From Convolutriloba macropyga (Eukaryota), in NCBI RefSeq assembly GCF_964194025.1, contig NC_134476.1, forward strand, positions 65,100,001 through 65,164,000: a DNA stretch of 64,000 nt, written 5' to 3'. Within the stretch, counting starts at the first letter, position 1. The number at the start of each line of letters is the position of its first letter. The translations under genes and the position numbers were made by a program. Below, one piece after another: positions 4,730 to 44,600 of the stretch. The notes beneath the pieces are model-generated. The model was not told where the DNA came from, did no database searches, and worked only from the letters and a program-made list of their open reading frames with translations.

Positions 4730-7700
4730 GTTGGAATCTCAATGTTTTCTAAAATGAGAGAAAGAAGCCGTTCTATTCACAATCAATGAAATTTCGTCAT
4801 TGTAGTCATATGATGATGTGTGATGGCTTATTTGTGTTGGAGAGAATTTATATAGCCCTGCATTTGAAAAATTTAAATCTGAACTTAAAGTTGGTTTTGA
4901 GATAAAAGCGTGTTAATTTAGGAATTTGGTGTTAAATGTGTGTAGCTTCAAAAAACGTGTGTAATAACTTTCAATAAAAACGTACGGATGAAAATGTGTG
5001 TATATTAATCTTAACTTACAGAATTCGAGTTAAAAAGCATTTTTTTCTGCTTAAGAAATGCCGCATACCTTTTATTTTTTTTTAAAAAAAAAAGGAAAAG
5101 AAAATTCTTTAAGAAGTATTGAAGTATTTTTTCGAGTGCTATCTAAAAATAAATACTTCATTAATTGCTCGGAATCAACCTTATTATGGGAGATTATAAG
5201 CTCAACTTTTGCTCGTGCAGTTTTAGCCGATCGATATAATAATATAAATAAGATTTATACAATAATTTAATAAGAGTTGTCGATCAGAAAGCTTTTCAAG
5301 TGTAGAAAACGGAGTTAAAGACAGTTTTTGAATTTCGTTTCTTTTTTAGAAGTTTTCGAGATTTAAATTTTTTGTGAACCTTACATTTGATATGGTTTTA
5401 TTCACATTCAGCACCTTTTTCAAATAAATTTAGGTCTTTTGTCAAATTGTGTCTTCTGTAAAAATTTGGATCAATTGAGACACCGGTTTTCTTGAAACCA
5501 GTTTACTTTTTGGTTTTCTAAATCAATTACAGACAATTTAGTTTCAAATCACAAATTCCACTAATGACAAGCCAAACTAAGTTCTAATTCAGGCCAAATG
5601 AAGATATATTATGTTATCAGAGAATAACTACGTTTTTTTGTTGTATACATTTTATGAAACCTTGAGTTTTGCCAGCGTTTGATATTTCTTTGCTTTTTCC
5701 TATAACTTAGTCTCAATAATCAAAAGTCCAATTGAAGTTGTAACGAAGTAATAAAAAACATCTTATATTTTCAGTTGATACCAAAAAGTTCAACCTTATA
5801 ATAATCGAAATTTGATAACTTCAAATGAACTTGTTTTCAAAAAACTATTAATGTATTTCGCAACTTTGCCAGTTTTTTTTAATCTTACTTCGGTTAATTG
5901 TAGCTTTGTGTCATGATTAAAAGTTGTGATCCACATTCTAGGTAAGCAAAAAACCTGCTTCTGAAAAAAAGCATTCTGGAATCCTGCTCCTGTAAGATTA
6001 CTTTTCATATTTTGTTCTTATTATGGGTTAATTTTTGTTATGACATCTGACTTTAGGTTGTACTCTTTGTTTTCTAAATTTTTCTAGCAGATAATTTTTG
6101 TGGTTAAAACAGAGTTTACATAATTCAAATTTAACCAATGCCATTTGACCCAATGTCATCTAACGATTGCTTCGAAAAGGGGTTGTCAGCCCCAGATGCC
6201 ATACTTCTAAAGCATTTGTCGTCCTCGCTAAGATCACTGCTTAACTGCGTCTCTGCTATGATTGGAGAGCTGCTATGGATGTTGGGCTTCTTTTGTGATG
6301 CGTCCAGTTACTTCTTTTTTCATTTATTTCTTCCTGACATAAAGAGTCAGATTGTCAATCATTTACAAGATTCTAGTTCTAATTTGAAGGACTCAGAAAC
6401 TTCTAATATCTCTTGATTCGCCAAACTCGAAAAAACCGAAACCATGTACTCTTGAAAAAACTAAATGCTGGTTTCAATTGGAGGTCAAGCGCAAGGTTTG
6501 CGTTGTTTGCGTACATTTGTAGACCGATTTCACATATCTTTCTGTTCAAACTCTGAATAATATGAAAATAAAAGACTTTGGTTTCTCTTGTATGATACTA
6601 TTCAACAAAATTTTGATTGCTGTTTTTTTTCCAAATTTCAGTGGAATTTTATGTGGTGCAACAACCTCCATGAGCTAACAAAAAACTTAATATTCGCTTG
6701 TTATCTGTTTTACCGGTGTCAAACAGACAGAATTCTTGAAATTGTGTCGGAATGTCCAAATTACTATAATGTTCGTCTCTTTTCGATTTTCTTTTACTTT
6801 TTGCCTGTTAAGGCTCAAGTTGATTGCTGATTGTGACGGGAAGGACAATTGTGTCGCAATATCTGACGCAATTGGCTCAAGGTTTTGCGCAACGATCATG
6901 TTATCCAAACGATTCTGCTCTGTTGTTTCCGTTTTCTTCATTCTGCCCACACTTTTTTCGCTTCAAGACGCCTCAGAATAACTTCATGGTGGTTTTCATT
7001 TTTTTGTGTGAATAGTTGCTCGTTGGCGGCAATGGCACTCATTTTGCATGTACTTGACTTCCATTTTGAAGACATCCGACGCTTTGTTGTTTTTTTTTTC
7101 TAATTTTCTGTGAAAATCATTGCCCCGAAATTATCTAGGTCGATCTATCTCTATGGGACGTACTCCGAGTAACTGCACTCAGTTTATGCGTTTTATTGTT
7201 GTCAAATTTTTGTCCCGAAAAAAGCCTCAAAATGGTTTAATAAATAAATTTTAATTTATATTTTTTTACGTCCTGTTTAAACTAATTAAAATGGATTATT
7301 CAATTTTTTGTTAATTGTTGACTGGTATCTAAAGCTTAACACCATTATGTTTTAAAAAAGTGCAATTTGTTACTCAAATCCTTGTTTGATGGATACCAAA
7401 ATGTTCAAATTATATTTTTTATTGGATTCTTAAGGTAATTTAGTTTTGGCTGAAATGGCATCGGATAAAATGGCTTCGGGTTTAATGCCATTGGGTAATT
7501 TGACCGACCTGACAGCAATTATTATAAATAATATTTATTAAAGCTAGTTGTTACATCCTGTATGACTCTTCGAGTTGTTTTATTAATTCGTTCAGCTATG
7601 ATTTGAGTTGCGATTTCGATTACTCTAACGTAAGAAAGGGAGCAAGAAGCGAGTGGATTTGCTGCGAGAATTTCCTTCACTCCAATTTTAGAGTGAGTGA

Positions 7701-8626
7701 GATTACGTTGTCTGAAAAAATGTTTCAATCTTTTTTTTCTCTTTCCTGTTTTTCCCCTCATTTTTTTTGTTTGAAACTCCTAGGCAATACGAAATTTTTG
7801 GTTTCTTGTTTAATTGTTGCTTTTTTCAAAAAACAATTACTTATCAATCAACAACCGACTATAGGGATTGAATTTCGAAAGAGAAAGAAAAGACGGAAAA
7901 AGAGATAAACAAATACTTGTTTGACGGCTTATTATTGCATAGTTACTGATGTTGACTGTTGCAGATTAATAATCCTGAGGTAATATTTTCTTATCCGTTT
8001 CTCTTTTCACTATATTTTGATGTCCTCCCGCTTCTTAGTCAGTTCTCAATTAGATTTATCATTTTGTGATCACGCCATCTTTCTCTGTATTCGATGTTAG
8101 ACAAACAAGCTCGTACGATGAAATAGTTTAGAATCTATAAAATGGATACATATTAATAGTTTATTCTGGTTATCATTTTTTTCTATTCCATGGCGAGAAA
8201 TTCCCTCAAATATGGCCCAGATTAAGTGCTGTTTAATTTGAGGCTCTATTGACTATAGGTAAAATAAATATTCCGAAAAAGAAGCGGAAGATTAATTGTA
8301 ACCTGGACTGTAAGTTTGATAAGCATATCACTATTTATAGTCGAGCGTGATTTCTGCGTCAGATAAAAAAAACGAGCCAAATTGTGAAGTGATTGAACCC
8401 ATCAATAAATCAAAAGTTAGTTTTCTAGTATACACCGGTTTTGTTCAAAATTATGAACACAATTTTGACGAGAAACCTGAATTCAACTGTTGTGGTGTTC
8501 CGCAAGGCAATTTATAAGCGCAATATTCTTGAGAACATGAGTTAAAGTATTGTGGTCTTCCGCAAGGCAATTTATAAAGACCATATTTTCTAAATCTTGG
8601 GTTAAAATGTTGTGGTGTTCCTCAAG

Positions 8627-8772
8627 GTTCAGAAACTGATGCACTCAATAAAATATGGAGCAGAGGAGGACTCTAGTGCCCAGAAATATATCACAGAACA
8701 GTGGCCTCACTTAGCCAGAGGAATGAGGCAGAACCTAGTGTCTGGATCCACTGAAGCCATCCAGCGGCTCAA
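8627..8772 (+). CDS. GRIN3-like: iGluR exon: start of S2 ligand-binding segment
   Basis: VQKLMHSIKYGAEEDSSAQKYITEQWPHLARGMRQNLVSGSTEAIQRL(K); donor aa|gtgagt, phase 2; an in-frame alternative acceptor would start the exon at 8633. Confidence 0.88.
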
Positions 8773-8802
8773 GTGAGTTCAGACAATTTTGATACGAGAA
8801 TT

Positions 8803-8966
8803 GGATCTTTTCCGTTTGTGCCCCCCAGGTTAGAGGGTGCATATTATTTGCACCTCTAAACGCACGTGCCATATTTTTTATAATGATTTACCATGTAATG
8901 TCACTTGCTCTGTAACTGGGGGGAGCATAACGTACTGGGGGGGGGGAACACAAACGGAAAGGACCC
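8803..8966. mobile_element. GG...CC MITE (Merlin-like)
   Basis: TIR ggatcttttccgtttgtgcccc / ggggaacacaaacggaaaggaccc; TSD cgagaatt/cgagaaat. Confidence 0.8.
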
Positions 8967-9215
8967 CGAGAAATAATGGCAAATAGTTCATTTCAGTACT
9001 GAAGCTGTTTTTCCGCAAGAACAGTTTAAATAGCCTAAATGAGGGTTTGCTTAGTTTTGTTCATTATCAATTTTTGTGGAACTTACATAGATACCAAACT
9101 TGTTAGACATGATATTGGTAAATGCTAGTAAGAAACTTGTCTTTTAAAAATCATCAGTTATCGGCCGAGGGAGATTTATGCTATTCGTTGCCTTTTATTT
9201 TGTCATTCATTTCTC

Positions 9216-9397
9216 GGGTCTTTTCCGTTTGTGCCCCCAGCTTAGTGGGTGCATATTATTTGCACCCCCCCCCCCCCACACCCCCCCCCCCCGTTCCATA
9301 TTTTTACATAATAACTTATTATGTAATGGCACGTGCCTGTAAATGGGGGTTGCGTAGCGTACTGGGGGGGGGGGGGGGGCACAAACAGAAAAGATCC
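9216..9397. mobile_element. GG...CC MITE (Merlin-like)
   Basis: Same TIR; perfect 8-bp TSD catttctc. Confidence 0.9.
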
Positions 9398-12336
9398 CAT
9401 TTCTCTAAATTATGCAAGTTTTAAATTTCGAGCAGAAACTCGTGACACGTGCTAGAAGTAATGGTTAAGTGACTCTGCTTGAAGTCACTGAGAACTTCTG
9501 GCGTTTATCGAGAACCGCGAAGTGGTTCTCGATAAACGCCAGAAGTTCATCGAAATGACTTCTGCAGAGTCACTAAGTCATGCCTAAAACACGAAACACG
9601 TACGTTTTAAAATGACAAAAGCGAACGAAACTCAACTTCTGGCTAAGTAGCAACCTCTGGCGTTTTGACTTCTGGCACTGCAGACTTTCGGCATTTTACA
9701 ATTTGCACGTGAGTGTTTTAATATAGACTCGGTAAAGCAGCTATTTACTAAATAATGATTGTGCCAAATGTTTCACTTTAAACTATTTACTCGGGTGAAA
9801 AAGATCGGGCCAATGAGACAAATAATTATGAACAGAAGTTGATTCTAATCTGCGTGTAGTCATTTCCAGAGTTGGAAAATTTGTTCTTATCTGATGTAAA
9901 AAAAAACAGAAAAACAACCATTTGATATGTCATATAGTGGATTGGTATCAATTAATGGTATGGAACGCTACAATTACAAAGTCCGGTTAAACACATCGAA
10001 ATTGAAGAATAAATTACCCCAAAAAGTTCGGTATCACAAGCAACTAACGCTCTTAAATAAAATTTCTTGAGTTAAAGTTTTTTATCATGTTTCATGCTAT
10101 ACTTTATTTTATCATGTTTCATGCCATACTGTCCTAGGTACATCTTTCATATGCTCGCGCTCTCCTTGAGAAAGTTTCAAATGATTTTTGAAGATATTTC
10201 ATATATTTTCATATAAGGCGCCTGTAAAGCAACTGATTTCTGAGAAATCGCAAAATGCATGCTTGGATTTTTGTTAAATATATGATCCTTTGGGATTTTC
10301 AGCAATCTTTTAAAAGCTTCGAATTTTTTTTTGTAAGGGAAGCAACGTTTCTTGTGATCTTCATATGAGTTAAACAAAACAATATATAACTTAGTCTGAA
10401 TAAAAAAAGAACAAATGCACTAAAATGGCTTCCAAAAAGTTGAATGATAAGCAAGCTTAGAATATACGGTATTCGCCAAACTGTTATTTTTCGTGCAATA
10501 CAGCTAAAAAAATATACCGTTTTAGAATTTACTGAAACAAAATATTCGGGTTGATTATCATACAACATTCCTCGAAATCTTACAGGGATCGATATAATGC
10601 TGTACTCTGTAAGAATTAAATCTGGCTTTTTATCTGCTAGCAGTTAATTCCAGAGTTGAAAAATATATTTTTATCTGATTTAAAGTAAAGAAAACACCAA
10701 CCAATTAGACTCCCAACTAGAGCATAAGTAACAATTGACGAGCGTTGAAAGAATGCTATGGCAGAATACGATCAGAACTATTTAGTTTTTATCCATTTAT
10801 TGCGTTTAACATCTTGTCTTAAAAGCGCTCGAAGTCTTTCAAAAATATAAAATTAGTCTGGTTAAAGTCTCTTGGTTTGACCATGTTTATGGCATAATGT
10901 CCTTAGTCAATTTTTAACAAAAAATGGTACTCTCGGTGTGAAAAATTTTCCGATGGTTTTTTAAGGATGCTTAATTTTTTATATTTGACACCTGCATGAT
11001 TTAACGCAACTAATTATTAAGATATCACAATATGTAATCAAGAATATGAGTTTAAAATCTAATCTTTTCAAATGTTCAGTATTTTTATATTTTAAAACGA
11101 TATCATTTCCCAAATCGACCCAAAAAAAAATTAAATGATTTTTTTAGTTTGTGTACAAAGATTGTACTTGGAAATAAATTATGATTTGCATGACACAGTA
11201 TATAATCTTCGGAAGGCCAAAGTCAATAACTTGGTATGGCTAGAAAATTATCCTAAGTTCTTAAACGTTTTACCATATTTCGTGAAATCGAAGGTAATGC
11301 AAACTCCTTCGCCCGGTTGCCAATCTTTACCACACTGGCAAGTTTTATCTAGTTTCTAGCAAGATAAAAAAAGAAGTATTTGCTTGATGAACGATATTGC
11401 AACGCATTTTTCTTATCTATACGGCCTCAAAAATAATCTTGTTGTCCCCAAAAAACATTCATAGATGCCATATCTGAGAACATAAATAATCTCTTTACTC
11501 TTCTTAACCATGAAAATCACGAAATCAGTCGAAGCTATCGGCTGTATACATTTCCAGCCTAAATTCGTATTTTCTCTGTCTTCATCATAGTCAGAAAAAA
11601 AGAAGCACGTTTTTGCAAAATTTATATTTCAGCAGTGTTCATAGGAAGTTCGAGCATTCTAAAATCTATAACTGCTATAATCTGTCATTTTGAAACCTAC
11701 AAGTGCTGGTTTTGAAAAATGTTAGAAAACACAACGAGGACTGTTCATGGTTTCTTGGATGTCACAGCAAGTGTGTAGTAACATTTGCTTCATCAGAAGG
11801 TTTTGATTATAGTGTTTCGAAAGATTATAAAAACACATGTTTTTGTATATTTCGATATATTGCTATATATTTATATATTTATATATTTATATATATATAT
11901 AAACACATGTTTTGTACAAAATTTTATAACAATCTCTTTCCTCTTAAACCCTGCATTAAAAACTTTTTTTCTTAGAAATATCTTGAAAGGAAAATATGAA
12001 TTCAAGCTTTTTGAATTTTGAATAACTTGCAAAAGGAAGTGTTAGGGGGTCTGAGCAGGCACAACTTGAACATCTACAAGTAATGCATTCGAAACACCGC
12101 TTTGTGTTTGCCAATCTTGCGTGCTAACCTTTACGCCAATTTGTCTTCAGCTCACGAATTTGGACATCTATCGCAACCCAATTAGTTTGTCTTAAATACT
12201 GAGTTAGTTTGTCTTAAATACGGCAAAAAATTTAATGCTTTTAATTCAGAAATGGAACATTGGAAGCGTTTTTACATTTTTTGGACTGAAATAGTTTAGC
12301 TTTAATCTGGCAAAAAATTTAGTGCTTTTAATTTAG

Positions 12337-12499
12337 AAATGGAACACTGGACGCGTACTTTGGAGATGCCCCAATAGTGTTCTGGGATGCGATCTCAGAT
12401 CCAGAGTGTAAACTGTTGACAGTGGGGGGCACCTTCGGAGACGACTACTATGGCATCGCCATCTCAAATGACAACATGCATTCCATATTCTTCAATCAG
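12337..12499 (+). CDS. GRIN3-like: iGluR exon: S2 core
   Basis: atttag acceptor; NGTLDAYFGDAPIVFWDAISDPECKLLTVGGTFGDDYYGIAISNDNMHSIFFNQ; donor cag|gtcagt; phases match both neighbours. Confidence 0.92.
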
Positions 12500-13649
12500 G
12501 TCAGTTTTAAATTTAAAAAATAAACAAAATTGACAATTAACTTTAAAAATCCTTTTTCGTCACATTTTTTTATGTTGGAGCGTTAAGGTGGGCGAGTGGG
12601 GGAGGGGGGTGGGTGGAGTTAAGGGTTGGAGAAAGTATTGTGAAAACGTCTCGTATAATAACAGAATTGAGTTATTTTATGTGCCAAGTTTTGGAGATTA
12701 AAATTTGAATTAGTATGATGGTACGTGATTAGATAATTGCCATCTATTCTGTGCCCCTCGTGTCGAGGTTTCGGGAAAACGAAAAGAGACGAAATCCGTT
12801 TCTTGATCATAAAATGGAGGTCTTTGTCATGTAAACAGAGTTCAAGTTTTTCATTGGTATAACCCAACTTAACTTCTACAAAACTGAATGTCAAGGAACT
12901 TTGATGCGTCAGAAACTGCAGACGTGGAACTATCCAGTAATTCTCTATCAAAAGAGTTCAAAAATTCAAAAAAAAAAACATTATTAGGGAAAATAATTAC
13001 GATTCATTTGTAATCATACAGGGATCATATTTTTTCGATGGTTACATACTTGAAGCTGCGGGGAAAATGTTATGATTTTTAATTGCTCTTGAACGAAGTT
13101 CATAACAATTATTGTAAACGTGTGTGTCTTTTTACGACTCGAAGAGGAGTATTGAGATTCTACAGGGTTTGTTTTAGCAGAAAGCAAGTTTTTTCAAGGC
13201 TTGAATTTTGACTTCTTTCTGTTGGAGCATTTACCTCCGTTTTTGATTGTTGACTTCTGTTGTCGGCATTTTTAAAACACTTTAATGTAGTTTGTTGGGC
13301 TACTTTTGTTTGTTTTCTCTTGTCTGTTTTGATGTTCTGATTTCGGTAAGGTTAGGTTAGAGATTATAATGCACGACGATTCGAGTGGTTTCCGGTATTC
13401 TACCGGCTATGTTTTTTAGCCGAAAGCAAGTTTCTTCATAACTTGGATTTTGACTTCTTTCTGTTCGAGCAATTAACTTCGTTTTTGATTGCTGACTTCT
13501 GTTTTCGAACATTGTCTTTGTTTAACAGTAGCTTCGTTTGTAATGTATAGTAATTTGGAACTGCTGGTTATTGATCAATGTGAAGAGGTCATTTTAAGAT
13601 TTTTTTTCCTTTATAAGTCACCCCTAATTATCTAAACTACACTGCACAA

Positions 13650-14016
13650 ACCCACCTCCCCTACCGCATATCTACTATCTGCCCCCCCCCAACACCTACC
13701 TACCCCCCCACCCCTCCCCACCACCCCCCCCCCCAACTTACACCCCACCTACCCCTAGCCCCTCCCTTCACCTAGCTACCCCCCAAATACCCCCCACAAC
13801 TACCCCAGCACTACCCACCTCCCCAACCTATCTACCCACCCAGCCAGCTATCTACCTCCCCCCCCCCCGCCCCAACTTACGACCCCACCTAACCCTACCC
13901 CCAAACTACCCCCTCCCTTCACCTAGCTACCCCCACCTACCCCCCCAAACAATACCCCAGCACTACCCTTTTCCCAACCTATCTACCCACCCGCCGCACC
14001 TAGCTCCCCCGCACCT
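13650..14016. repeat. C-rich degenerate minisatellite (ccccacctac-like), two ~160-bp superunits
   Basis: Visible C-runs; flanking ~125-bp direct repeat at 13261-13386 and 14024-14147. Confidence 0.85.
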
Positions 14017-16133
14017 AAAAAAATGTCGGCATTTTTAAAACACTTTAATTTGGTTTGTTGGGCTACTTTTGTTTTTTTCTCTTGTTTATATTGATGTTGT
14101 GATTTCGGTAAGGTTATGTTACAGATTATAATGCACTACGATTCGAGTTTTTTATGCAAAAATTTCGCTTGACAGTTTCGACTTTTCGAGTGACTTCTAC
14201 GCCCCTGATTATTTCGCTTCGCGTGATCTAAAATTCTCTCTCAATCATAATTTCGAGCAACTGAACTAAATTGGTGGCAATTTAATACAAGAAGGCAAAT
14301 CAAAAGTGCGCCGAAACTGCTGCCATTTTTCACTTTAAATCTTAATAGTGGTAAATGTTAACCTCTTATGTGGTTATTTGAAGCCGTCTATTGAACTTCT
14401 TAGTCCCATTTAGACTCCCCCCCCCCCCGACTGAAGCAGGCTGTAATTGATTAGAGCTCCCTCTAGTCGTTCGAGAGCAATTCTTCCGACGTTTAGTCGG
14501 TTATGTTTATTAAACCATACATGAGATCCGCATGACCTAAAAAATGGTTGACCCTGGACCCCAAGGTACATACAGATCTGCCAAATCCAGATAATTTTTC
14601 AAAAACTGATGGGTTTTAAACTGATTTCTTATTAACGTATAATATATTCTCTGATCCTGTTTAACTAATAATTAATCCGGAAACGCAAAAAACAGGTACT
14701 ATTTCATCTATTTAAAACACCCGAAAAAACTAATAAAATTCTGGCTCGCAAGTTTTTGGTTTAACATTTCAAGTCAACGATATTTTTTTCATAAAAGTCT
14801 CCGTTTAAATTGTTATTTTATGTGCTTAAGGACACTTTTCGACTGTAAACAACTTGAATTTAGACTTTTCAAATCTTGGCCATGGCTAGATAAATGACTG
14901 CCAAGTAAAAAACTGACAGGACCGTAAACCTGGCTTAGTAATGAACAGAGATTTGTAATGACAACTGCCTAGAAATGAAGTTCACTCGACATTGTGTCAT
15001 AATCCTCCCTATATCCAAATACTGCACAATTTTACTCAACCTTGATAATAGTAAAGTAAATCATTCGCTGTATTATCGCTCCTGATTTAGTGAACTGGTT
15101 TATAAGTCTCAAGCTTAGATAAAATTATGTTGGGTAATAAATACTTACAATTAAAAACAATTACCTAATACATACTGTAATAAATATACGTCTGTTAATA
15201 GAGTACTTGATACCTATTATTTATTACATACTGTTTGTAAAAAAATAATAGGTATCAAGTATTCTATTAACAGACAGCTCTTTGTTCTTAAAGCAACAGG
15301 GCTTACCGAAACTTTCGAGCTGCACAAATTTGTACTTATAAGCTGTTATCAAAACGAGCGTTAAATGTGTTGTGTGAAATATATCATAGCTAGCACTTAA
15401 AAAATTTCTCACTTCTCAATTTTTGAGTAGTCAATTTGGATAAGCTTCAATCGCAAAATAACTTAGACGGAAATTTTCAAATTAATGGACGAACTGAATC
15501 TCGGCGTGGCAAGAGTATTGTCATTTTTCAACTCAGAGGTTTCTCTGGCTCTCAACTTTGTGTCAATAGAGAACCATCTCTCCCACAAAAAGTCTTGGAG
15601 AGATCCATTTTTAGTTACCGGATTGTGTTGTTTATACTTATATGAGTATCTGAAGGATGCAGGATTTGACATTTAATCATAGAAATGTATTTACCAAATG
15701 GTGTTTCAGTATTTGTTCAACAATTTTTTTTTTTAAAAAAGTGTCAATTAATTTAGGACTCTCATGTTGTAAGAAGCCAAACTTTCGTGTGACTCAAGTT
15801 ATTATAAGTCTTTGTGACCTTAAAAAGTGTTTAAAATTAAACTGTGAAGGTGCCTCTACGGTTACAACTAGGTCCAGCTTTTACTCTAAAAAATGTCTAG
15901 GTAAATATGCCTGCGACGTTTGCAGGTAAGCAAAATTGCAGGTAATATTACCTCAGTAAACAAAGTGAGAAAAAGTGAGAAAACAAAATAAGAAAAGAAA
16001 GTGAAAAGAGAGTGCGAACAAAATAAGAGAAGAAATTGAAAAAAGAGAAAGAAAGAGAGAGGAGAAAGTTAGAAAAGGAACAGAAGAAAACGAGGAAGGC
16101 AAGTGAGAAAAGAAATCAAAAAAGAGAGAAAAG

Positions 16134-16577
16134 GGATCTTTTCAACAATTGCCCCCCCCCTTTGGTACCTAGTAGAGAATCGCCACCCCTTTTGTGCTAT
16201 ACTTTACCACAATATTAGTTGGCCTACAGTTTAGATAGCCGAATATCAGTTTAAGTGCAATTGCGGACCGCCGTTCACGGCCATGCCTCTCACGCGCTGT
16301 GGGATGTAATCCGGAAATCGCGGGTCGGTTATCGCGGCGAAGCCGCGACGCGCGCGAAGCGCGCCCACCGACCCGCCAGTCGGAAATTCTTTTCGCTTTG
16401 TATTCCAATTCGGCTAATTGCCCTAGCATGGCGCACTTTATTCTATCCAGTTTAACACAGTATGAGCATACACGGAAAGTTTAGTCGTCTCTGATTGGTT
16501 AATAAATCGCTCGCTTAAATTCTATTCAAGAATAGGCCCCCCTTTTGCAAAAGGGGGGGCAATTGTTGGAAAGATCC
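16134..16577. mobile_element. Longer GG...CC non-autonomous DNA transposon with CpG-rich core
   Basis: TIR ggatcttttcaacaattgccccccc / gggggggcaattgttggaaagatcc; perfect TSD gagaaaag. Confidence 0.9.
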
Positions 16578-17238
16578 GAGAAAAGAATTAGCGAAAAGAA
16601 AGTTAGAGAAGAAAGTCAGAAAAGGAAGTGAGAAAAAGGAGGAAAAAAGTCATAAAAGAAAGTGAGTGAAGAAAATCAGATTTTGAGAATAGATCCCAGA
16701 TATATAACAAATCCGTCTAAAAATTTCATAAACACCCAAAATTTGCGTAAATTCAGGCAATTTTTCCTGTGTGAATACTTACCACGATTTTTTTGTGCGC
16801 AAACTTCAACTCCCTTTGTTATGGTACCGCACAATTTTTTGTGCTTTCATCATTTGCATATCCTTCCATGGGAAAAGCTGGAAATAGCATTTCCCGTCCA
16901 AAACTTCATTAAAATAGCGAGAATATTTATGCTAGGCTGTTGAATAATAGGATCAATAGTTTTTTTTTCTGAAGAAATCGAACTTATTAAAAACTCAATG
17001 TGTAAAATGCGATTTCATTATTTCTTCATATTTGTTCTCATGTTGTATTTCCCTTCCCACTATGGCTATTTTTCATTCTGTGTAATCTTTTAATCGCAAC
17101 GAGCTTTGCTCTTTTTTCAAATTGAAAAGACTAAATTATGCTGATATTCTGACGTTGAATTTGTGCATACATTATTTGAAGAAAATCGCACATAAAAGTG
17201 TTCGAATTCAGAACTGAATGTGAAATAATGATAATTTG

Positions 17239-17411
17239 GGATCTCTTCTGTCCCCCCCCCTCCCCCCCCCCAGTGTTTTTCACGCGAAGTTACAAATTTT
17301 ATGAATATAACACTTTACTATGTAAAAATATAGCACGTGCGCTTGGGGGCGTAAAAAAATATAAGCCCACTAAGTTGGGGGGGGGGGGGGGTTGGCAAAC
17401 AGAATAGACCC
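17239..17411. mobile_element. GG...CC MITE, ggatctattctgtt subtype
   Basis: TIRs plus TSD ataatttg/agaatttg. Confidence 0.8.
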
Positions 17412-17614
17412 AGAATTTGTTTAGTTTTGGCGGTTAATAAATTGTTGGTTATAAATTAAACCAATACTGGTATTCGGCTTTTCATCCTTTTGGCTACAAT
17501 TGTTGGCGTCCGATTATTCAAAATCTGAAACTTATAGCCGAAATTCAGGCACCCCCAAAGATTAATAATTAATATTTGACTGATGTGTACTGAAAAACTT
17601 GTTCTCAATTATAG

Positions 17615-18462
17615 ATCGCAATTANNNNNNNNNNNNNNNNNNNNNNNNNNNNNNNNNNNNNNNNNNNNNNNNNNNNNNNNNNNNNNNNNNNNNNNNNNNN
17701 NNNNNNNNNNNNNNNNNNNNNNNNNNNNNNNNNNNNNNNNNNNNNNNNNNNNNNNNNNNNNNNNNNNNNNNNNNNNNNNNNNNNNNNNNNNNNNNNNNNN
17801 NNNNNNNNNNNNNNNNNNNNNNNNNNNNNNNNNNNNNNNNNNNNNNNNNNNNNNNNNNNNNNNNNNNNNNNNNNNNNNNNNNNNNNNNNNNNNNNNNNNN
17901 NNNNNNNNNNNNNNNNNNNNNNNNNNNNNNNNNNNNNNNNNNNNNNNNNNNNNNNNNNNNNNNNNNNNNNNNNNNNNNNNNNNNNNNNNNNNNNNNNNNN
18001 NNNNNNNNNNNNNNNNNNNNNNNNNNNNNNNNNNNNNNNNNNNNNNNNNNNNNNNNNNNNNNNNNNNNNNNNNNNNNNNNNNNNNNNNNNNNNNNNNNNN
18101 NNNNNNNNNNNNNNNNNNNNNNNNNNNNNNNNNNNNNNNNNNNNNNNNNNNNNNNNNNNNNNNNNNNNNNNNNNNNNNNNNNNNNNNNNNNNNNNNNNNN
18201 NNNNNNNNNNNNNNNNNNNNNNNNNNNNNNNNNNNNNNNNNNNNNNNNNNNNNNNNNNNNNNNNNNNNNNNNNNNNNNNNNNNNNNNNNNNNNNNNNNNN
18301 NNNNNNNNNNNNNNNNNNNNNNNNNNNNNNNNNNNNNNNNNNNNNNNNNNNNNNNNNNNNNNNNNNNNNNNNNNNNNNNNNNNNNNACTTCTGCACAAAT
18401 ACAGACAGAATTTCTTCCTAGACAGATTGAGAGAAAAATGGTTTATAGAGTCCAGAACACAG
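17615..18462 (+). CDS. GRIN3-like: iGluR exon: end of S2, interrupted by assembly gap (5' boundary uncertain; firm part 18387-18462)
   Basis: After gap: LLHKYRQNFFLDRLREKWFIESRTQ then cag|gttagt; before gap an acceptor tatag|atc gca att (IAI) fits the few missing residues. Confidence 0.75.
17625..18386. other. Assembly gap (762 N)
   Basis: Run of N. Confidence 1.
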
Positions 18463-38062: not shown

Positions 38063-38781
38063 CGCGGTGGACGCAGAACAAGCCAAAATAAGACTGCGCA
38101 TAGTTTTTGCAATCTTTTATGTATTCCAGTGCACCATGGCAACAATATAAGGTCATTTTTAAGAGATCTGGAGATTTGTAGTGCCAACGGACTACTCCAT
38201 GACAGAGCCCCTCATCCGCTTTAGAACGTAATCCGGAAACTGCGGGCCGGTTATCTCGAAAATTTTTGGCTTAGTTGACTTCATTTTAAAAACTCGGCTT
38301 TCTTGACTATCGGCCTGCTTGACCACTTAATTTTTGCTAATCCCATCTTCTTTATGCGTTAAAAACGGTAGCAGTCAAGCAAGCCGATAGGCAAGCAAGC
38401 AGAATTTCGAAAATGATGTCAAGTAAGCCAAAAAAATATGGGGTACCCGTACTTTAAGTCGCCCCTAGTGGGCGCGCATAACGCGCGTCGCTGCTTCGCC
38501 GCAATAACCGGCCCGCGGTTTCTGGATTGCATTCCACAGCGCATGAGAGGCATGGTCATGGACAGCGGTCCGCTGATACCCGTACCCCTTTGATGTCTAT
38601 AAATTGACGGATTTTTGTTTCTTTGGAGCATTGAATACATTATGCACTGTAAAACTATGCGCAGTGTTGGTTGTAACGGTTAACCATGTATTATTTCTGA
38701 TAGATTACATATTTATTACATAATTTTCGGCTTGCTTTTATGTCGGCTTGCTTTTACTTCGGCTTACTTTGCGTTCACCGT
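38063..38781. mobile_element. Foldback-like element with long imperfect inverted arms
   Basis: cggtggacgc..aagcc / ggctt..gcgttcaccg; actgcgcatagtttt / aaaactatgcgcagt; inner hairpin ctatcggcctgcttgac / gtcaagcaagccgatag. Confidence 0.7.
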
Positions 38782-39384
38782 TGAAAACTATCATCCATGC
38801 GGAAACAAGCTTAATTGTTCGCTTTATTCCCATAATGAACCTCAAATCAAGATCTTTTTTTCTTGAAAGAAGAGATTAAACTTTCTTGGAAACGTCTGAA
38901 AGAGGAAACATTTTTTCATCAATTTTGAACATTCCACCAGACCAATAATGCCATTTTATATCTAACACTTCCGACAAGCTTGATTTCATTGTTTATTGTA
39001 AATTTCAACTAACATAAAGCCCTGCAAAATTGTTAACATTTCATTTTGCCCAAATTCTTCAATCAAAATGGGAAAAACTTTGCTTTGAACTTGTCGGAAT
39101 GAAACTTAACTCTCAACTGAATTTGATTACAAGTTTCTTTCAAAAATTTCTGCAACATAAAGCGACATTATTGCTGCAAGTCAAATCTTTGCAACGCTAA
39201 TAATAGTTTAAGAGTTGTTTTAAGATCTTACACGTGTAATGATCAACTTTTCACACATATTGTTACAAATCCGTAAGTAAAATGAAACTTTATATGGGAC
39301 GAGATCAAGATCTTGCTAAAGTTGTTCAGTTTTTATCAGAAAACAAATTTCAAGAATTAGACAACTTGGCAATGTTACATTTTA

Positions 39385-39597: not shown

Positions 39598-39934
39598 AGT
39601 TATGTACCAAGTTTAGTTTGTTCACTGGACCATAATCTTTCTTTAAACTGTCTTCGTAAATTCATCAAAAAGCTTTTAGATCGCGGCCACAGTAAATTGA
39701 ATTTATTTTAAATGAGCGCAAAATTCAATTTGAAACCCAATTTTGATCAAATTAGAATAATTATGATTTGTGAATTAAATTTAATCGTAAATTGTATTAT
39801 ATATATTTCGCTTTAAATGTCTTTATACTGCTTTAGTTTCACATTATCTCGATGTTTTTATGTCGCAAAGATGAATTTAAACTTCGCATAATTCTATTTT
39901 TACTAAGCTGGAGAACTAAATTGACTTACTAAAA

Positions 39935-39937
<3 letters not shown>

Positions 39938-39990
<53 letters not shown>
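39938..39990. repeat. (AT)n microsatellite
   Basis: Direct observation. Confidence 0.95.
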
Positions 39991-39993
<3 letters not shown>

Positions 39994-40905
39994 TGTATGT
40001 GTGTGTATGAAAATTTTTGATAAAAAATATGATGACCGATAAAATTTAAATTTAAATGACATTAATTACTATATTGATTTGAGACAAATTTTCTGAAAAT
40101 ATTGAATTTGGACTTAGATTTTATTTGTACAAAATTCAGTACCCTTTTCAATTTTTGTTTTTCAAAATTCCCAGCAATTCTCGTTTCCATTTTCGCTGAT
40201 CTAAATTTCTCCCTCATTACCATTTAGTTCCATTTATGGCGCAACTTTTAGTTCTCATTTTTTTGAACTAATTAGACATAGTAATAATTACTCTCAGACG
40301 AGTTAGAAATACTGGAGCCCAACTTTATTTGTTCACAGACTTAATTCGACTCGAGTAGTCTTTCACAGCATTACACCTTTAATTAAAGTTGGCAATTAAA
40401 ATGCGACTTCAATTGGTGAAACTAAATTTAATCACAAATTCAAATTGGTCCAATTCTTGATTTGATACCCGAAAAGTTGAGGCGACAAATATAATTGTAG
40501 GTGATAATTATATTTAATTAAAATGCCGAGTTAATTGTAGCCAGTGGGATTTAAAATTCAATCCCAGCTTTTCAAATCGTTTCACTTAAATTCATTCTAA
40601 GGTTTGCCGTGGGTTTAATAACATTACATCTCTTGTACACATCGAACTTAATAAACTTAATAAAATCTTGACCAAATTTGAAAAACCAAAACATCAAACA
40701 CAAACAAACATAACATAATTTTGCCACACACAAAGTTACCCAATTCTTATAATTCTCAAATTCAAAAAAAATAATCAAATTGACAACGTTTCTCAATTTT
40801 TCGTAATTGACAACTTTTCTCAATTTTGTGAACAAATTATTATAAAATAAACGTTATTCTCGCTTCATTCATAACTACTAACCCTAGCTGTTATAACCAG
40901 TTACT

Positions 40906-41691
40906 ATGACGACCCTAAGAGCGACTTCAATGGACTGTGGGTGTGGTAATCAAGATTGTGAAGATTCAATAAATACAATCTCTCTGCTAGTTGTGAACCC
41001 AATGCGAGCACCTCTCGTCATCGAACTCCTCGAATGGGCAACTTTCCGCGACCTCTACCACGAAGTGTGCGCAAGAACTTGCTTACCGCGCTCGTCCTTC
41101 AAACTCTCCCACGATCGAATCGGAGTTCTTTCTCCTGAGAACTTCCGCCAAATGGTGGATTGTGGAATTACAAGTGGAACTAAAATCCACCTGGGTGTTA
41201 ACATGCAGACTGGAACTTACAGTTCGGAGCCGAAACTGAAGTTTAACGAAAAGTTTATCCGGGAACGCGTGAACAAAATGACCCCGGATGAAGTACAGCT
41301 ATTTTTCCGCGGGAAATACACCCTTGATTTCACAATTCCGCCCATGCCCGGGTTAGAATTTTGCGGAACAGCTCAGTTTATTATGAGGCGACCAATGAGT
41401 AACAGCCCCCCGCAGTTTCTGACCTGTTTTGAGCGTCTTACGCCCAAAAGGGAAATTACCCACGACGCGTCTGGCAACAAAAAGACTGGAAAAATTGTCG
41501 GGGTCGATTCAAGCGTACAATTGTGTACGCTGCTTTTGAAAACTAAATTGAGCCAGGATTTCTATGACTCCCAAGGAATGCCCGCCCGGACGATGGAAAC
41601 GCTGATTTCGATGTTTGAGGGATTTTTGAACTTATTCGAGAACAGGAAAGACAATAACAGCGGGGGTAGCAGTTCGAAAAATACTTTCTGA
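40906..41691 (+). CDS. MIDN-like: Intronless midnolin/stuxnet-like protein (Ubl + Catch1 + Catch2), 261 aa, lacking the C-terminal basic helix
   Basis: Only long uninterrupted ORF in the window, GC-elevated; ubiquitin-fold pattern (ISLLVVN...CGITSGTKIHLG); KMTPDEVQLFFRGKYTLDFTI resembles Catch1 ([21 protein letters not shown]); QDFYDSQGMPARTMETLISMFEGFL resembles Catch2 ([25 protein letters not shown]); AATAAA near 41922. Confidence 0.75.
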   Translation: MTTLRATSMDCGCGNQDCEDSINTISLLVVNPMRAPLVIELLEWATFRDLYHEVCARTCLPRSSFKLSHDRIGVLSPENFRQMVDCGITSGTKIHLGVNMQTGTYSSEPKLKFNEKFIRERVNKMTPDEVQLFFRGKYTLDFTIPPMPGLEFCGTAQFIMRRPMSNSPPQFLTCFERLTPKREITHDASGNKKTGKIVGVDSSVQLCTLLLKTKLSQDFYDSQGMPARTMETLISMFEGFLNLFENRKDNNSGGSSSKNTF

Positions 41692-44600
41692 GAGCAGAAA
41701 TTCATAAAAATTTGATTTGAAACATTTCGGTTTTAGTTTCGCTCTAGTGTCGTGATTTGTTGTGACGTCACAAACTTATTTTGATGCCATTCAATGGCAA
41801 AAATATACAAAGCAATTTCTCCGTTATAGTCGTATCAGTTTTCATTTTTAATATTTTCAGTTTATTTCAAAGAATTTAGTAAATTTATTTCAATAATTTC
41901 AAAGAACGAGTTTTTGTTATGAATAAACAGCAATTTTAAATTACTGCAGTTTAATAACAAGATTAACTACAAGCACGATTTTATCTTAAAATATAAACAC
42001 TATATTCAAAAAAAGATTGATACGACTATAATGCAGAAAGTTCCTCAATTTCCGCTCGTAAAAATAATTCGTGTACTAAAAACTATTTGAAACATAAAAA
42101 ATTTAAAACTTTTAAAAGCACAAAAAAAAACTTTCGCTACTTGAAAAGCAGTGATTTTGTTTTTATTTGTAGTATTGTCCTGTGTTTGTATGATCATTGT
42201 CAAGTCTTGTGTTGCGTAATAGTTTTGTGCTATGGTATTTGATAAGAAAATGTTCTAAACGCCAATTTTTTCTCGCTCAACTTAACTTCATTAATTTAGA
42301 GAACAGAAGATCAGAAATTACCTTAATGAGAAAAAATCGAGCAATATTAGTTCAGTTTGTCACATCCGTGATGACTGTTAACAACTTGTCAAGAAAATTT
42401 GATTTCTAATTATAAGCGTTTTTTAAGACAAAACGGTTGTTATAATTTGAAAATGAAGCGGAAAAAAAGGTAGAAAACATAAAAACTTCGAATAAAATAA
42501 TTAAAAATTAACTATTAGAAAACTTGAAACAAAATTTGAAAAAAATTTAAAAAAACAACTATTGCATATTTCATTTTTTAATCAAAAAAATGAGATATGC
42601 AATAGATAATTTTAAATTAGTTTTTCTTATAACCCTCTAAGCTCTTTCCAAAGAAACGTTTTATGCATAAGGAAAAATTATCTAATCTTCGAAAAACAAT
42701 GCTTGCATCCAGAAACCTCAAAAGCACCTCAAATACAAGTATGGAATAAATACGTACTTTATTATAAGGTCTGTAAAATATCTTAGTTCACAAATGACAA
42801 TTGTCTCCATAACTGCGTTAAAGACCTTCATTATTCTATTGTAGGCACAAAATTAATAACTTTTTTCTCGCACTTATGATAAAATTTCTAAAGATCTCAA
42901 AACTAATTATTGATTTGAATGTAAACATGAGTAGAGGTAAAAAACATCGAGAAGATAAAATAATTTCATTTAAGTTCATCCTCCAGAGATGTTTCATTAT
43001 GCTCATCCTAAAAGTTTAAAGAAACAATATCGGAGTGCGAAAGAAAGCGTAAACGTCTTATTATATTATTAAAGCAATAACCTTTTTTTAAGATAATCAC
43101 GAAGATTAGAATGCAAAAAATGTTCATTCAAGATATTCTCAGCAATTTAGTTATTTTTGCACACCTAATGATGACAAAAAAATCTAAGCTTCTGTCTACT
43201 GTCAGAAAGATAATTGCGTCTTTTTCAGAACACAGATTCAGTTTTTCGTGAGCATTCACACATTGCTATTTTGAAGTTTTATTCTGCTCACGCAAAAAAA
43301 AAAACAAAACATTTCGGCAGTTAAAAGGACAATAATGGCAAAAGATTACTTTTGAAAGGCTCTGTCGTTTCGTAATTCCAATTAGCAGTTTTTGGCCAAA
43401 ATTTGAAGCCTTTTTGAGCTTTCCCTTCAATCGACAGAAAATGGAAAACTCTATTCAATCAGTTGGTTTTGGTGTTGAAAAATTATACAAAGGCACGACT
43501 ATTTATTCCAGAAAACCCCAGGCAAGCGTAAAATTCACAAAAATATTTATTGTTGGAACTCCGAAAAATTGAAAGCTGGAACAGTGTTTGATAGTGAATG
43601 GGCTGGCAATAACTTGTAGAGAATTATTCTACTCAGATGCGAAAAGCCTTCTAATAGAACAAATCTGTATTCGTTGGAAATTTTTTGTTCCTGAAAAATG
43701 CGTCAGTAGTCAATTTGTCAAAAAATTTGGGACAATCTGAGACAGTTTTCTTCTAGTTTCAACATGCTCTCAAGATTAAAGTTCTATTTCTTCACCTGTT
43801 TTGCTGAGACAATAAAGGTATTTGCTGTGCCAAATTTTTTGCTGAACGCGTTTCATTTGACTATTAACTCGAGGACCAATTCGAAAAATTTTCTTGCTAA
43901 AAATTTGAGCAAACATTAGATTAAGTGATGCACCCAAAAATTTATTCCTTGTTCAATTATACCACATGTCTCACTCTAATATCTTTAAATCATTTTTAAT
44001 AAAGCACAAAGATCTCTCCTTAAAAAGGCATTTCTCAATTTAGTTTTTGCTGATTTTTTATGTATCTAGAACGTGATTTTGGTGTTCATGCTTGTAAATC
44101 TTAGCTATTATGAGTACTAAAAAACCAAAAAATATCTTTAAAATTACGTCATTTAGTAACCTGTATATATGAAAGAAATATCAACTTTTCAAACTCTTCC
44201 GATAATAAACACGTAAGATTTAAGCGATTATTCTACCGCTTTTTTCCTTAATATTTAGTCAAACCACTGTAGTTAACCACCCAAAATAATTTTTGTGTGA
44301 TACTTGTAACCTTTGCTTCTAAAATTTTGCTCAACAAAAAAGGACATCCCGACACTTGAACATGTTCAGCAATTTTCATTAGAACCTTCCCTCTTAGTCA
44401 TTTCAAAACAGTAATTCGAAGCAAGCAAAATTTTTAGCAATAACTACGCCGAATCCTATTTGTTCGCAAAGGAAAAGTCCTAAAATATAGATTTGAATGG
44501 TTACGGTTATAATAGCAGAAATTTCCTCACAAAAACGTTTGCGAGAGTAGAAAAGTACACTATATCAAAAATCAACTGTACCTAGGAGTTTGTCCCTGAC

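What the first reader, a model, noticed from the sequence alone, without database searches (positions are those of the whole stretch)
40906..41691. Intronless 'mini-midnolin' that keeps Ubl and Catch but lacks the proteasome-docking helix
Seen: an intact single-exon 261-aa ORF in an otherwise intron-rich neighbourhood. It has a Ubl pattern, then segments resembling midnolin Catch1 and Catch2 joined by a short (~35-40 aa) linker, and stops ~15 aa after Catch2. Established: midnolin (fly stuxnet) drives ubiquitin-independent proteasomal degradation by capturing substrate beta-strands with Catch and docking to the proteasome through a C-terminal Arg/Lys-rich helix that also carries the NLS. Inference: this divergent paralogue or retrocopy could catch substrates without delivering them (a decoy or stabiliser), act in the cytoplasm, or dock through Ubl alone. 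The strand aligning to the conserved Catch2 GVFSGTFSG motif is replaced by QLCTLLLKT, suggesting different substrate specificity.
Basis: partly seen in the sequence, partly recalled or inferred. Interest (0 to 1): 0.85.

Follow-up and report, generated by a model that had tools for sequence, protein, structure and literature searches.

The report
Helix-less mini-midnolin gene, divergent copy
This intact single-exon gene is a fast-evolving copy of an undescribed family of short relatives of midnolin. Midnolin feeds proteins to the proteasome without ubiquitin. The family keeps its ubiquitin-like and substrate-catching parts but lacks the tail helix that anchors midnolin to the proteasome and sends it to the nucleus.

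Summary
Window 40906-41691(+) is an intact 261-codon ORF, the longest real ORF in the 64 kb. Its GC is 0.47 against 0.26-0.28 in the flanks.

On its own it matches no Pfam family or PDB chain. An exhaustive phmmer search found about 12 full-length short relatives (E down to 1.5e-19), and a later search added six more (228-241 aa).

Profiles of this family hit human midnolin in the PDB:
- Ubl plus Catch1: E 2.5e-12.
- Catch1 plus Catch2, on the EGR1-Catch crystal chain 8vqp: E 4.4e-7.

An AlphaFold model built with the family alignment (pTM 0.69) has midnolin as its top Foldseek hit, both in the PDB and in Swiss-Prot models.

All members whose DNA was read are single ORFs. Nearly all complete members stop 2-6 residues after the last Catch2 helix. 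No alpha-Helix-C/NLS and no downstream exon was found.

The same assembly holds two more conventional paralogues, P0003 and P0026. The window copy sits on a very long branch and has lost the conserved FG-zipper motif, but it keeps the reading frame, the codon-position GC and the hydrophobic core.

Expression and function are untested, and no RNA run was listed. No family member carries a name in any source. This scan's notes on this genome hold no mention of midnolin.

Verdict: a real, new architectural variant of a known kind.

The parts
40906..41691 (+). Complete single-exon ORF, 261 aa plus TGA stop
   Evidence: Identical protein P0001 on a 232-kb contig of assembly ERZ25071359.
40969..41214 (+). 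Ubiquitin-like domain (residues 22-103), ending in the linker motif V-N-M-Q-T-G (97-103)
   Evidence: AF2 pLDDT about 90. Z 12-13 to ubiquitin and Z 12.3 to the midnolin Ubl of 9nkg. The family profile aligns LxVNIQSG to midnolin LVPTVEAG.
41227..41394 (+). Catch1-like half (about residues 108-163): two helices and two strands
   Evidence: AF2 gives H113-123, H127-134, E139-144, E153-159, with pLDDT 63-90. The family profile aligns to midnolin 114-157.
41395..41451 (+). Short Catch1-Catch2 connector (residues 164-182). It holds the family-conserved DPxFYxxxxER-type segment, much altered here.
   Evidence: pLDDT is below 50 from residue 173.
41452..41637 (+). Catch2-like half (residues 183-244). 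The strand region has lost the FG zipper (TGKIVG, then VDSSVQLCTLLLKT). It is followed by KLSQDFYDSQG and the final helix MPARTMETLISMFEGFLNLF.
   Evidence: HMMER alignment to the family. MAFFT alternative. The family profile aligns to midnolin 278-316. The final helix has pLDDT 72-87.
41638..41691 (+). Low-complexity C-terminal tail (residues 245-261) and stop; no basic amphipathic helix
40841..40846 (+). TATAAA 60-65 nt upstream of the ATG. A possible core promoter; weak evidence in AT-rich DNA.
41922..41927 (+). First AATAAA after the stop, about 230 nt downstream. A possible poly(A) signal; weak evidence.

Best explanation
The ORF is a genuine, probably still functional protein-coding gene. 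It is a highly diverged paralogue within a small, unnamed family of intronless proteins, mostly 205-241 aa. These are homologues of midnolin reduced to two of its three functional modules: the Ubl with its short [IVM]-x-[ST]-G linker, and a compact Catch domain (Catch1, a connector of about 35 residues, Catch2). The family ends just after the last Catch2 helix, so it has no alpha-Helix-C/NLS.

Shown here: the homology, the architecture, the single-ORF gene structure, the paralogues in the same assembly, and the unusual divergence of this copy.

Inferred for the family: the Catch domain captures beta-strand-forming segments of client proteins, as in midnolin. Without the helix that binds Rpn1 tightly and imports midnolin into the nucleus, these proteins cannot sit stably on the proteasome and are not confined to the nucleus. 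The linker that in midnolin lies in the Rpn11 groove is conserved. I therefore think the most likely role is a transient, Ubl-dependent catch-and-deliver adaptor (about 45% of my belief). A non-delivering holder or decoy is next (about 30%).

Inferred for the window copy: it has lost the aromatic/glycine FG zipper and evolves 4-6 times faster than its relatives. It most likely has a changed client range or a regulatory role.

The confidence figure covers the whole statement. Identity and architecture alone I put at about 0.9, a working gene at about 0.7, and the shuttle mechanism at about 0.3-0.45.
For: Real gene:
- Intact 261-codon ORF, chance about 6e-7 at its own composition.
- GC3 is 0.52 in a background of 0.26-0.28, the same as the family members in L002, L003, L006 and L007.
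- It keeps 30 of 53 family-conserved columns identically and 14 more conservatively.
- Single-copy depth.

Family:
- phmmer against 1.84 billion representatives gave 12 full-length short relatives, E 1.5e-19 to 1e-4. Six more of 228-241 aa came later.
- An HMM built without the window copy scores it at 122.5 bits.

Midnolin homology:
- Profile A1 against the PDB: midnolin 9mbo_A at E 2.5e-12, profile 6-142 on midnolin 27-157.
- Catch-only profile A2: EGR1-Catch crystal chain 8vqp_A at E 4.4e-7 over 7-129, and midnolin 278-316 at E 2e-5.
- The top 9 hits of A2 are all midnolin.
- Foldseek: top PDB hit 9wbg_f, midnolin with Ubl and Catch resolved, E 1e-6. The top 8 Swiss-Prot models are midnolins.

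No helix:
- Family stops lie 2-6 residues after ILDNLL-type helices, and L007 ends GGA CTT TAG with no GT donor.
- No conserved or basic-rich downstream exon.

Literature:
- Alpha-Helix-C (377-413) is necessary and sufficient for proteasome binding and carries the NLS. Shortening the Catch linker to 28 residues is tolerated (PMC10617673).
- The Ubl and its linker residues V99/V102/A104 dock on Rpn11, and GxFxG forms the FG zipper (10.1101/2025.02.22.639686).
- The C-helix binds Rpn1 at about 88 nM (PMC12888917).
Against: - No expression evidence. The four runs that hold the sequence behave like genomic DNA, and no RNA run was listed.
- No orthologue of this copy closer than about 31% identity exists in the databases, so dN/dS could not be measured.
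- The very long branch (2.18-2.25 against a median of 0.38-0.56) and the loss of the zipper also fit relaxed constraint.
- The window protein alone does not hit midnolin by sequence. The link runs through the family profile.
- The AF2 model is weak (pLDDT below 50) exactly over the Catch2 strands.
- In human cells, midnolin without alpha-Helix-C does not bind the proteasome. Delivery by the Ubl alone is therefore speculative.
- I could not test whether the genome also has a canonical midnolin.
Confidence: 0.55

Rival explanations
1. A relic under relaxed selection. This duplicate of a mini-midnolin gene has lost its substrate-binding motif and is drifting, but has not yet acquired a stop or frameshift. 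It does nothing.
For: - The terminal branch is 4-6 times the family median.
- The FG zipper is lost, with a 9-14 residue indel in Catch2.
- It retains the fewest conserved columns of any full-length member except P0013.
- No RNA run was listed, and no close orthologue was found.
Against: - At about 70% protein divergence, a neutrally drifting sequence would have acquired stops (chance of staying open about 1e-6 or less).
- It would also have lost its GC3 of 0.52 in a genome of about 27% GC.
- 14 of the 23 changes at conserved columns are conservative.
- The Ubl, Catch1 and the final helix still fold confidently.
Confidence: 0.2
2. A non-degradative holder or decoy. The family, and this copy, bind Catch-type clients without engaging the proteasome. 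That would stabilise the clients or compete with a canonical midnolin.
For: - Alpha-Helix-C is necessary for proteasome binding in human midnolin.
- One-arm constructs degrade poorly.
- The family lacks the helix.
Against: - The Ubl and the Rpn11-groove-type linker [IVM]-x-[ST]-G are conserved across the family and in this copy. A pure decoy would not need them.
- No evidence yet that a canonical midnolin coexists in this genome.
Confidence: 0.2
3. An ordinary full-length midnolin whose C-terminal helix lies on an unrecognised downstream exon.
For: - The neighbourhood is said to be intron-rich.
- ORF callers see only contiguous ORFs.
Against: - The stop position just after Catch2 is shared by nearly all complete members from several assemblies, with different stop codons and no GT donor at L007.
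- No conserved peptide and no basic-rich segment within 5-6 kb downstream in the window, L002 or L003.
- No GC-rich coding island until about 45.6 kb.
Confidence: 0.04
4. A Ubl protein unrelated to midnolin beyond the ubiquitin fold. On this view the Catch resemblance is chance.
For: - The single sequence gives no midnolin hit.
- Global TM-scores to midnolin models are low, about 0.3.
Against: - A profile of the post-Ubl part alone hits only midnolin chains at significant E-values. It hits both halves, in the right order.
- The low TM reflects domain orientation and disordered loops.
Confidence: 0.03

Closest known systems
Midnolin (human MIDN, Q504T8; fly Stuxnet)
   Same: - N-terminal Ubl followed by a short linker ending in a small residue plus Gly.
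- Catch1 and Catch2 halves in the same order.
- The final Catch2 helix with the G-x-P-x-R-x-[VI]-x-T-[IVL] ... IL-x-x-LL pattern.
- Midnolins are the top fold hits.
   Different: - No alpha-Helix-C/NLS (human residues 377-413). The family stops at about the equivalent of human residue 318-322.
- The Catch linker is about 35 residues and partly conserved, against 111 poorly conserved residues in human.
- Intronless.
- The window copy also lacks the FG zipper.
Miniaturised midnolin of the annelid Dimorphilus gyrociliatus (Nardone et al., bioRxiv 10.1101/2025.02.22.639686)
   Same: Similar size (about 245 aa), with minimal unstructured regions between the Ubl and Catch.
   Different: The annelid protein keeps a basic alpha-Helix-C. 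It localises to the nucleus, binds the proteasome and degrades EGR1 in human cells. The authors conclude that all three domains are necessary and sufficient. The family here has only two of them.
Engineered midnolin truncations (delta-alpha-Helix-C, delta-Loop3, Catch-only, EGR1-Catch fusion 8vqp)
   Same: The natural architecture here resembles delta-Loop plus delta-alpha-Helix-C. The Catch-only profile aligns end to end with the 8vqp construct.
   Different: Those are laboratory constructs. Delta-alpha-Helix-C loses proteasome binding in human cells. Whether the natural proteins compensate is unknown.
UBL-UBA shuttle factors (Rad23, ubiquilin/Dsk2)
   Same: A possible working analogy: a Ubl for transient proteasome contact plus a client-binding module. 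Ubiquilins appear among the Ubl-level fold hits.
   Different: There is no UBA domain. The client module is a Catch domain, which binds beta-strands rather than ubiquitin. This is a resemblance of principle only, and rests on my own knowledge.

Membership tests
Midnolin (Ubl-Catch-alpha-Helix-C adaptor) | N-terminal ubiquitin-like domain | tested here: met
   AF2 pLDDT about 90 over residues 22-100. Z 12-13 to ubiquitin and Z 12.3 to the midnolin Ubl. Profile match to midnolin 27-105.
Midnolin (Ubl-Catch-alpha-Helix-C adaptor) | Short Ubl-Catch linker whose V102/A104/G105-type residues lie in the Rpn11 groove | tested here: inconclusive
   The sequence pattern is kept: family I-Q-S-G, window M100-Q-T102-G103, against human V-E-A-G. 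The V99 equivalent is variable. Binding to Rpn11 cannot be tested with these tools.
Midnolin (Ubl-Catch-alpha-Helix-C adaptor) | Catch1 half (two helices plus two strands; human 112-156) | tested here: met
   The profile aligns to midnolin 114-157. AF2 gives H113-123, H127-134, E139-144, E153-159.
Midnolin (Ubl-Catch-alpha-Helix-C adaptor) | Catch2 half with its terminal helix (human 266-332) | tested here: met
   Family profile to midnolin 278-316 at E 2e-5. The window helix 225-244 aligns with pLDDT 72-87. The strands are poorly modelled.
Midnolin (Ubl-Catch-alpha-Helix-C adaptor) | FG zipper (F-x-G-x-F-x-G) on the substrate-pairing strand | tested here: not met
   The motif is kept as [YFWL]xGx[FY]xG in nearly all other complete members (not in P0013, and G-to-A in P0022/P0023). 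In the window copy it is K-x-G-x-I-x-G under MAFFT or C-x-L-x-L-x-T under HMMER.
Midnolin (Ubl-Catch-alpha-Helix-C adaptor) | C-terminal amphipathic, basic alpha-Helix-C that binds Rpn1 and serves as the NLS | tested here: not met
   The ORF ends 17 residues after Catch2 in a low-complexity tail. Relatives end 2-6 residues after Catch2. No downstream exon was found.
Midnolin (Ubl-Catch-alpha-Helix-C adaptor) | Promotes ubiquitin-independent proteasomal degradation of bound clients | not testable with these tools
   Needs reporter-stability and co-IP assays.
Short Ubl-Catch family defined here (P0003, P0004, P0005, P0007, P0018, P0024, P0026-P0031 and others) | Full-length collinear similarity, single ORF, stop shortly after Catch2 | tested here: met
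   phmmer E down to 1.5e-19 over residues 22-246. A leave-one-out HMM gives 122.5 bits. The window copy is the most divergent member and carries a longer tail.

The most novel reading that the evidence does not exclude
Natural helix-less midnolins are a distinct class of Catch-domain proteins. They would work outside the nuclear, Rpn1-anchored midnolin route, either as soluble Ubl-dependent shuttles or as beta-strand holders. This genome would run a small paralogue set in which one fast-evolving copy (this ORF) has swapped the FG zipper for a hydrophobic Leu-rich segment, so that it captures a different class of clients.
Probability: 0.25. Interest if true: 0.8.

Novelty: new variant of a known kind. 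Interest (0 to 1): 0.62.

Why it matters
[quoted passage not shown] It also leaves open whether other proteins use similar tricks (Discussion).

A conserved, multi-species family that naturally keeps only the Ubl and Catch would be a natural experiment on what the two-module unit can do without the Rpn1 anchor and NLS. The family has at least three loci in this one assembly.

It offers compact Catch domains of about 130 residues, with a short and partly conserved connector, for biochemistry and for degrader engineering. In this ORF it also offers a natural variant of the substrate-pairing strand.

It would also extend the evolutionary picture of ubiquitin-independent degradation in invertebrates.

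Tried and rejected
- Single-sequence searches of the ORF gave nothing useful: Pfam had no hit, the PDB gave only harmonin at E 1.3, and the word-indexed search of 5.8 billion proteins returned only the ORF itself.
- Single-sequence AF2 was useless, with pLDDT 36.
- The language-model atlas gave only generic Ubl leads. The structural atlas search also gave only Ubl-level matches.
- VIA-align re-ranking was dominated by the Ubl.
- AFDB fold clusters returned long proteins (467-891 aa) at ranks 1-3 and no cluster for the short family.
- RNA evidence: the four runs found behave like genomic DNA, with even depth across intergenic DNA. A second request restricted to RNA libraries listed none.
- The profile search in the word-indexed database added little.
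- Allele pairs of the paralogues (P0003/P0020, P0004/P0021) gave too few differences for a dN/dS estimate: 4 synonymous and 2 non-synonymous, and 1 and 3.
- Rfam found nothing in the window.
- Retrocopy idea rejected: no poly(A) tract is seen after the stop, no flanking direct repeat of 25 nt or more, and all family loci inspected are single ORFs.
- I could not identify the organism. The paper search for assembly GCA_013332895 found nothing.
- I did not paste the human or D. gyrociliatus midnolin sequences printed in the papers into tools, so no rooted tree with canonical midnolins was built.

Full report
**1. The observation**

Window 40906-41691(+) is an uninterrupted ATG-to-TGA ORF of 261 codons. 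Apart from artefacts that run through a block of N, it is the longest ORF in the 64 kb.

It forms a sharp composition island. ORF GC is 0.47, with codon positions at 0.46/0.42/0.52, against 0.28 upstream and 0.26 downstream. The chance of 261 stop-free codons is about 6e-7 at the ORF's own base composition and about 1.5e-9 at that of the flanks.

Contigs of four public runs from two samples cover the ORF and its flanks at the same depth (13-23x) and show no variant inside it. It is therefore single-copy genomic DNA. Those runs behave like DNA libraries, with even depth across intergenic sequence, so they say nothing about expression.

**2. Relatives**

Alone, the protein hits no Pfam family. 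It hits nothing meaningful in the PDB and only itself in the word-indexed database of 5.8 billion proteins.

The exhaustive phmmer search of 1.84 billion cluster representatives found 12 short proteins of 169-292 aa. They align over essentially the whole length (query 22-246), with E-values from 1.5e-19 to 1e-4 at about 30% identity. Three long bacterial fn3 proteins in that list are spurious local matches.

A search seeded with P0003 added six more members of 228-241 aa. An HMM built from eleven relatives without the window protein scores it at 122.5 bits.

No member carries a name or a UniRef source. They come from ENA and JGI assemblies, Logan contigs, and NCBI (one traced to an unannotated assembly).

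**3. The family is homologous to midnolin**

- A profile of the 13-sequence alignment hits human midnolin chains in the PDB at E 2.5e-12. Profile positions 6-142 lie on midnolin 27-157, which is the Ubl plus Catch1.
- A profile of only the post-Ubl part has the crystallised EGR1-Catch fusion 8vqp_A as its best hit. This is E 4.4e-7, aligned from profile 7 to 129, and so spans Catch1 and Catch2.
- That profile next hits full-length midnolin at residues 278-316 (E 2e-5) and isolated Catch2 chains. Its top nine hits are all midnolin.
- A profile of the Ubl C-terminus, linker and Catch1 aligns the family's L-x-V-N-I-Q-S-G with midnolin's L-V-P-T-V-E-A-G, and the following helices and strands with midnolin 114-157.

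The domain limits of human midnolin come from Gu et al. (PMC10617673): Ubl 31-105, Catch1 112-156, Catch2 266-332, alpha-Helix-C 377-413, NLS 402-413.

**4. Structure**

With the 18-sequence family alignment, AlphaFold2 gives pTM 0.69 and mean pLDDT 69.5:

| Part | Predicted elements | pLDDT |
|---|---|---|
| Ubl | residues 22-100 | about 90 |
| Catch1 | H113-123, H127-134, E139-144, E153-159 | 63-90 |
| Final helix | 230-251 | 72-87 |
| Connector and Catch2 strands | 173-204 | below 50 |
| Tail | 248-261 | below 50 |

Foldseek's best PDB match is 9wbg_f, the midnolin chain with Ubl and Catch resolved on the 26S proteasome (E 1e-6, 226 columns). The eight best Swiss-Prot AlphaFold models are all midnolins, from mouse, frog, human, fly, rat and zebrafish.

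Global TM-scores are low, about 0.3. That is expected for two flexibly linked domains and long disordered loops in the targets. VIA-align confirms the Ubl, with Z 12-13 to ubiquitin and Z 12.3 to the midnolin Ubl.

The two-helix, two-strand make-up of each half agrees with the description of the Catch domain by Nardone et al..

**5. No docking helix**

In the window protein the last Catch2 helix ends at residue 244. A 17-residue tail follows (E-N-R-K-D-N-N-S-G-G-S-S-S-K-N-T-F) with only three basic residues and no predicted structure.

Nearly all complete relatives stop 2-6 residues after the same helix. They use different stop codons in different assemblies. The end of L007 reads GGA CTT TAG, without a GT donor.

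I translated 5-6 kb downstream of the window ORF and of the loci L002, L003, L004 and L005, plus the short remainders of L006 and L007. The only peptides conserved between loci were between the near-identical L004 and L005. No basic-rich segment turned up in the window, L002 or L003. No GC-rich coding island follows the ORF before about 45.6 kb.

The family therefore stops at roughly the equivalent of human residue 318-322, about 55 residues before alpha-Helix-C.

**6. Gene structure and paralogues**

Every member whose DNA I could read is one contiguous ORF. This holds on long genomic contigs (L002, L003, L005, L010, L011) and on short ones (L006, L007). Intronlessness is thus a family trait, not the mark of a recent retrocopy of this locus. 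No poly(A) tract is seen after the stop, and no flanking direct repeat of 25 nt or more.

The assembly that holds the window's contig (ERZ25071359, ctg36268_40x) also holds:
- P0003 and its 99%-identical allele P0020 (ctg37782_54x and ctg30504_51x).
- P0026, which is 64% identical to P0003 (ctg36863_46x).

The genome therefore carries at least three loci. One caveat: the contig names suggest a metagenome-style assembly. That the three loci belong to one organism rests on similar coverage and composition.

**7. How this copy differs**

- It is 22-31% identical to every relative.
- Its terminal branch is 2.18-2.25 substitutions per site, against a family median of 0.38-0.56.
- Its position in the tree is unresolved. 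A clade with the paralogues from the same assembly is not rejected (p-AU 0.44).
- At 53 columns conserved in at least 75% of the other full-length members, it keeps 30 identically and 14 conservatively. Typical members keep 78-91% identically.

The main loss is the motif [YFWL]-x-G-x-[FY]-x-G. Nearly all other complete members keep it (P0013 does not, and P0022/P0023 have Ala at the last Gly). It aligns with midnolin F280-x-G282-x-F284-x-G286.

Nardone et al. show that this motif forms an 'FG zipper' with Y-x-G-x-F in strong substrates, and that swapping it re-targets binding. In the window protein:
- MAFFT puts K-K-T-G-K-I-V-G there, followed by a 14-residue insertion.

Either way both aromatic residues are gone.

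By contrast, the linker equivalent to midnolin V102/A104/G105 is kept as M100/T102/G103. In midnolin these residues are buried in Rpn11 and required for degradation.

**8. Functional or decaying?**

Arguments for a working gene:
- The open frame has survived about 70% protein divergence.
- GC3 is as high as in the conventional family members in a genome of about 27% GC.
- Most replacements at conserved columns are conservative, and the fold is retained in three of four structural blocks.

Arguments against:
- There is no transcript evidence of any kind.
- There is no orthologue for a dN/dS test.
- The branch is long.

I put about 0.7 on a working gene and 0.2 on a relic.

**9. Mechanism (inference)**

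In human midnolin, alpha-Helix-C is necessary and sufficient for stable proteasome binding and contains the NLS. It binds Rpn1 at about 88 nM. The Ubl docks on Rpn11 and places Catch over the ATPase pore. A Catch linker of 28 residues is tolerated.

A natural Ubl-Catch protein should therefore still catch beta-strand degrons. It would lack the anchor and the nuclear address.

The whole family conserves the Ubl and the Rpn11-type linker. I therefore favour a transient, Ubl-dependent shuttle that is not restricted to the nucleus. A non-delivering holder or decoy is the main alternative. The window copy, with a Leu-rich segment in place of the zipper, would bind other clients or act as a regulator.

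None of this is shown.

**10. Comparison with what is known**

The closest described case is the miniaturised midnolin of Dimorphilus gyrociliatus. It has a similar size but keeps a basic alpha-Helix-C and works in human cells. From it the authors argue that the three domains are necessary and sufficient.

I found no paper describing helix-less natural midnolin homologues. Searches for midnolin with 'Catch domain', 'metazoa', 'paralog' and 'midnolin-like' turned up none. This scan's notes on this genome hold no mention of midnolin.

The ORF fails two defining features of midnolin proper, the FG zipper and alpha-Helix-C. I therefore file it as a homologue with a new, reduced architecture and not as a midnolin.

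**11. Verdict**

Novelty: a new variant of a known kind. Interest is moderate to high for the proteasome field. It is limited by the lack of expression data, the unknown organism, and the open question of whether a canonical midnolin coexists in this genome.

Noticed in passing
window 38196-38790: A very high-copy element. Contig word depth is 7,600-17,900 against about 15-25 for the neighbourhood. It has two 59-nt arms in inverted orientation (38196-38254 / 38504-38562, 81% complementary). GC is about 0.44-0.49. There is no Rfam match. It is probably a dispersed SINE- or MITE-like repeat.
   Followed up: partly
window 40776-40830: Two tandem copies of a motif of about 26 nt (AATTGACAAC-[G/T]-TTTCTCAATTTT) lie 75-130 nt upstream of the ATG. 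One run (X2) has a contig with extra letters at a 40847 to 40797 joint, which suggests copy-number variation. It could be a duplicated regulatory element.
   Followed up: no
window 40930-40962 (residues 9-19): The N-terminus contains M-D-C-G-C-G-N-Q-D-C. From the internal Met9 it would read MDCxC, like the palmitoylated N-terminus of PSD-95 (recalled from memory, not tested). No other family member shows this Cys cluster. It may hint at membrane anchoring.
   Followed up: no
L004 / L005 (P0002, P0017, P0019 versus P0018): In one species group, P0018 stops just after Catch2 (…IRMVE*). The near-identical P0002, P0017 and P0019 read through for about 60 further, partly hydrophobic residues. This looks like a stop-codon polymorphism or assembly difference. 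For P0002 the locus did not translate back to the query.
   Followed up: partly
family alignment, connector after Catch1 (window residues 160-180): The short Catch1-Catch2 connector of the family carries a conserved L-D-x-P-[LM]-x-x-D-P-x-F-Y-x-x-x-x-E-R segment. It has no counterpart in the poorly conserved 111-residue human linker. It could be a structural element or an intramolecular pseudo-substrate.
   Followed up: no
fold searches: AN1-type zinc finger protein 4 (ZFAND4) aligns with the model beyond the Ubl: query 5-261 in Swiss-Prot models and 6-188 in the ESM Atlas. TM is low (about 0.3-0.38). Whether ZFAND4 has a Catch-like element after its Ubl was not examined.
   Followed up: no
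window 39922-40009: A (TA)n then (TG)n microsatellite. All short-read contigs break here.
   Followed up: no
window 41816-41847 / 42008-42039: A 32-nt inverted repeat (81% complementary, 160 nt apart) lies in the putative 3' region of the gene, around the AATAAA at 41922. It may be a small MITE.
   Followed up: no
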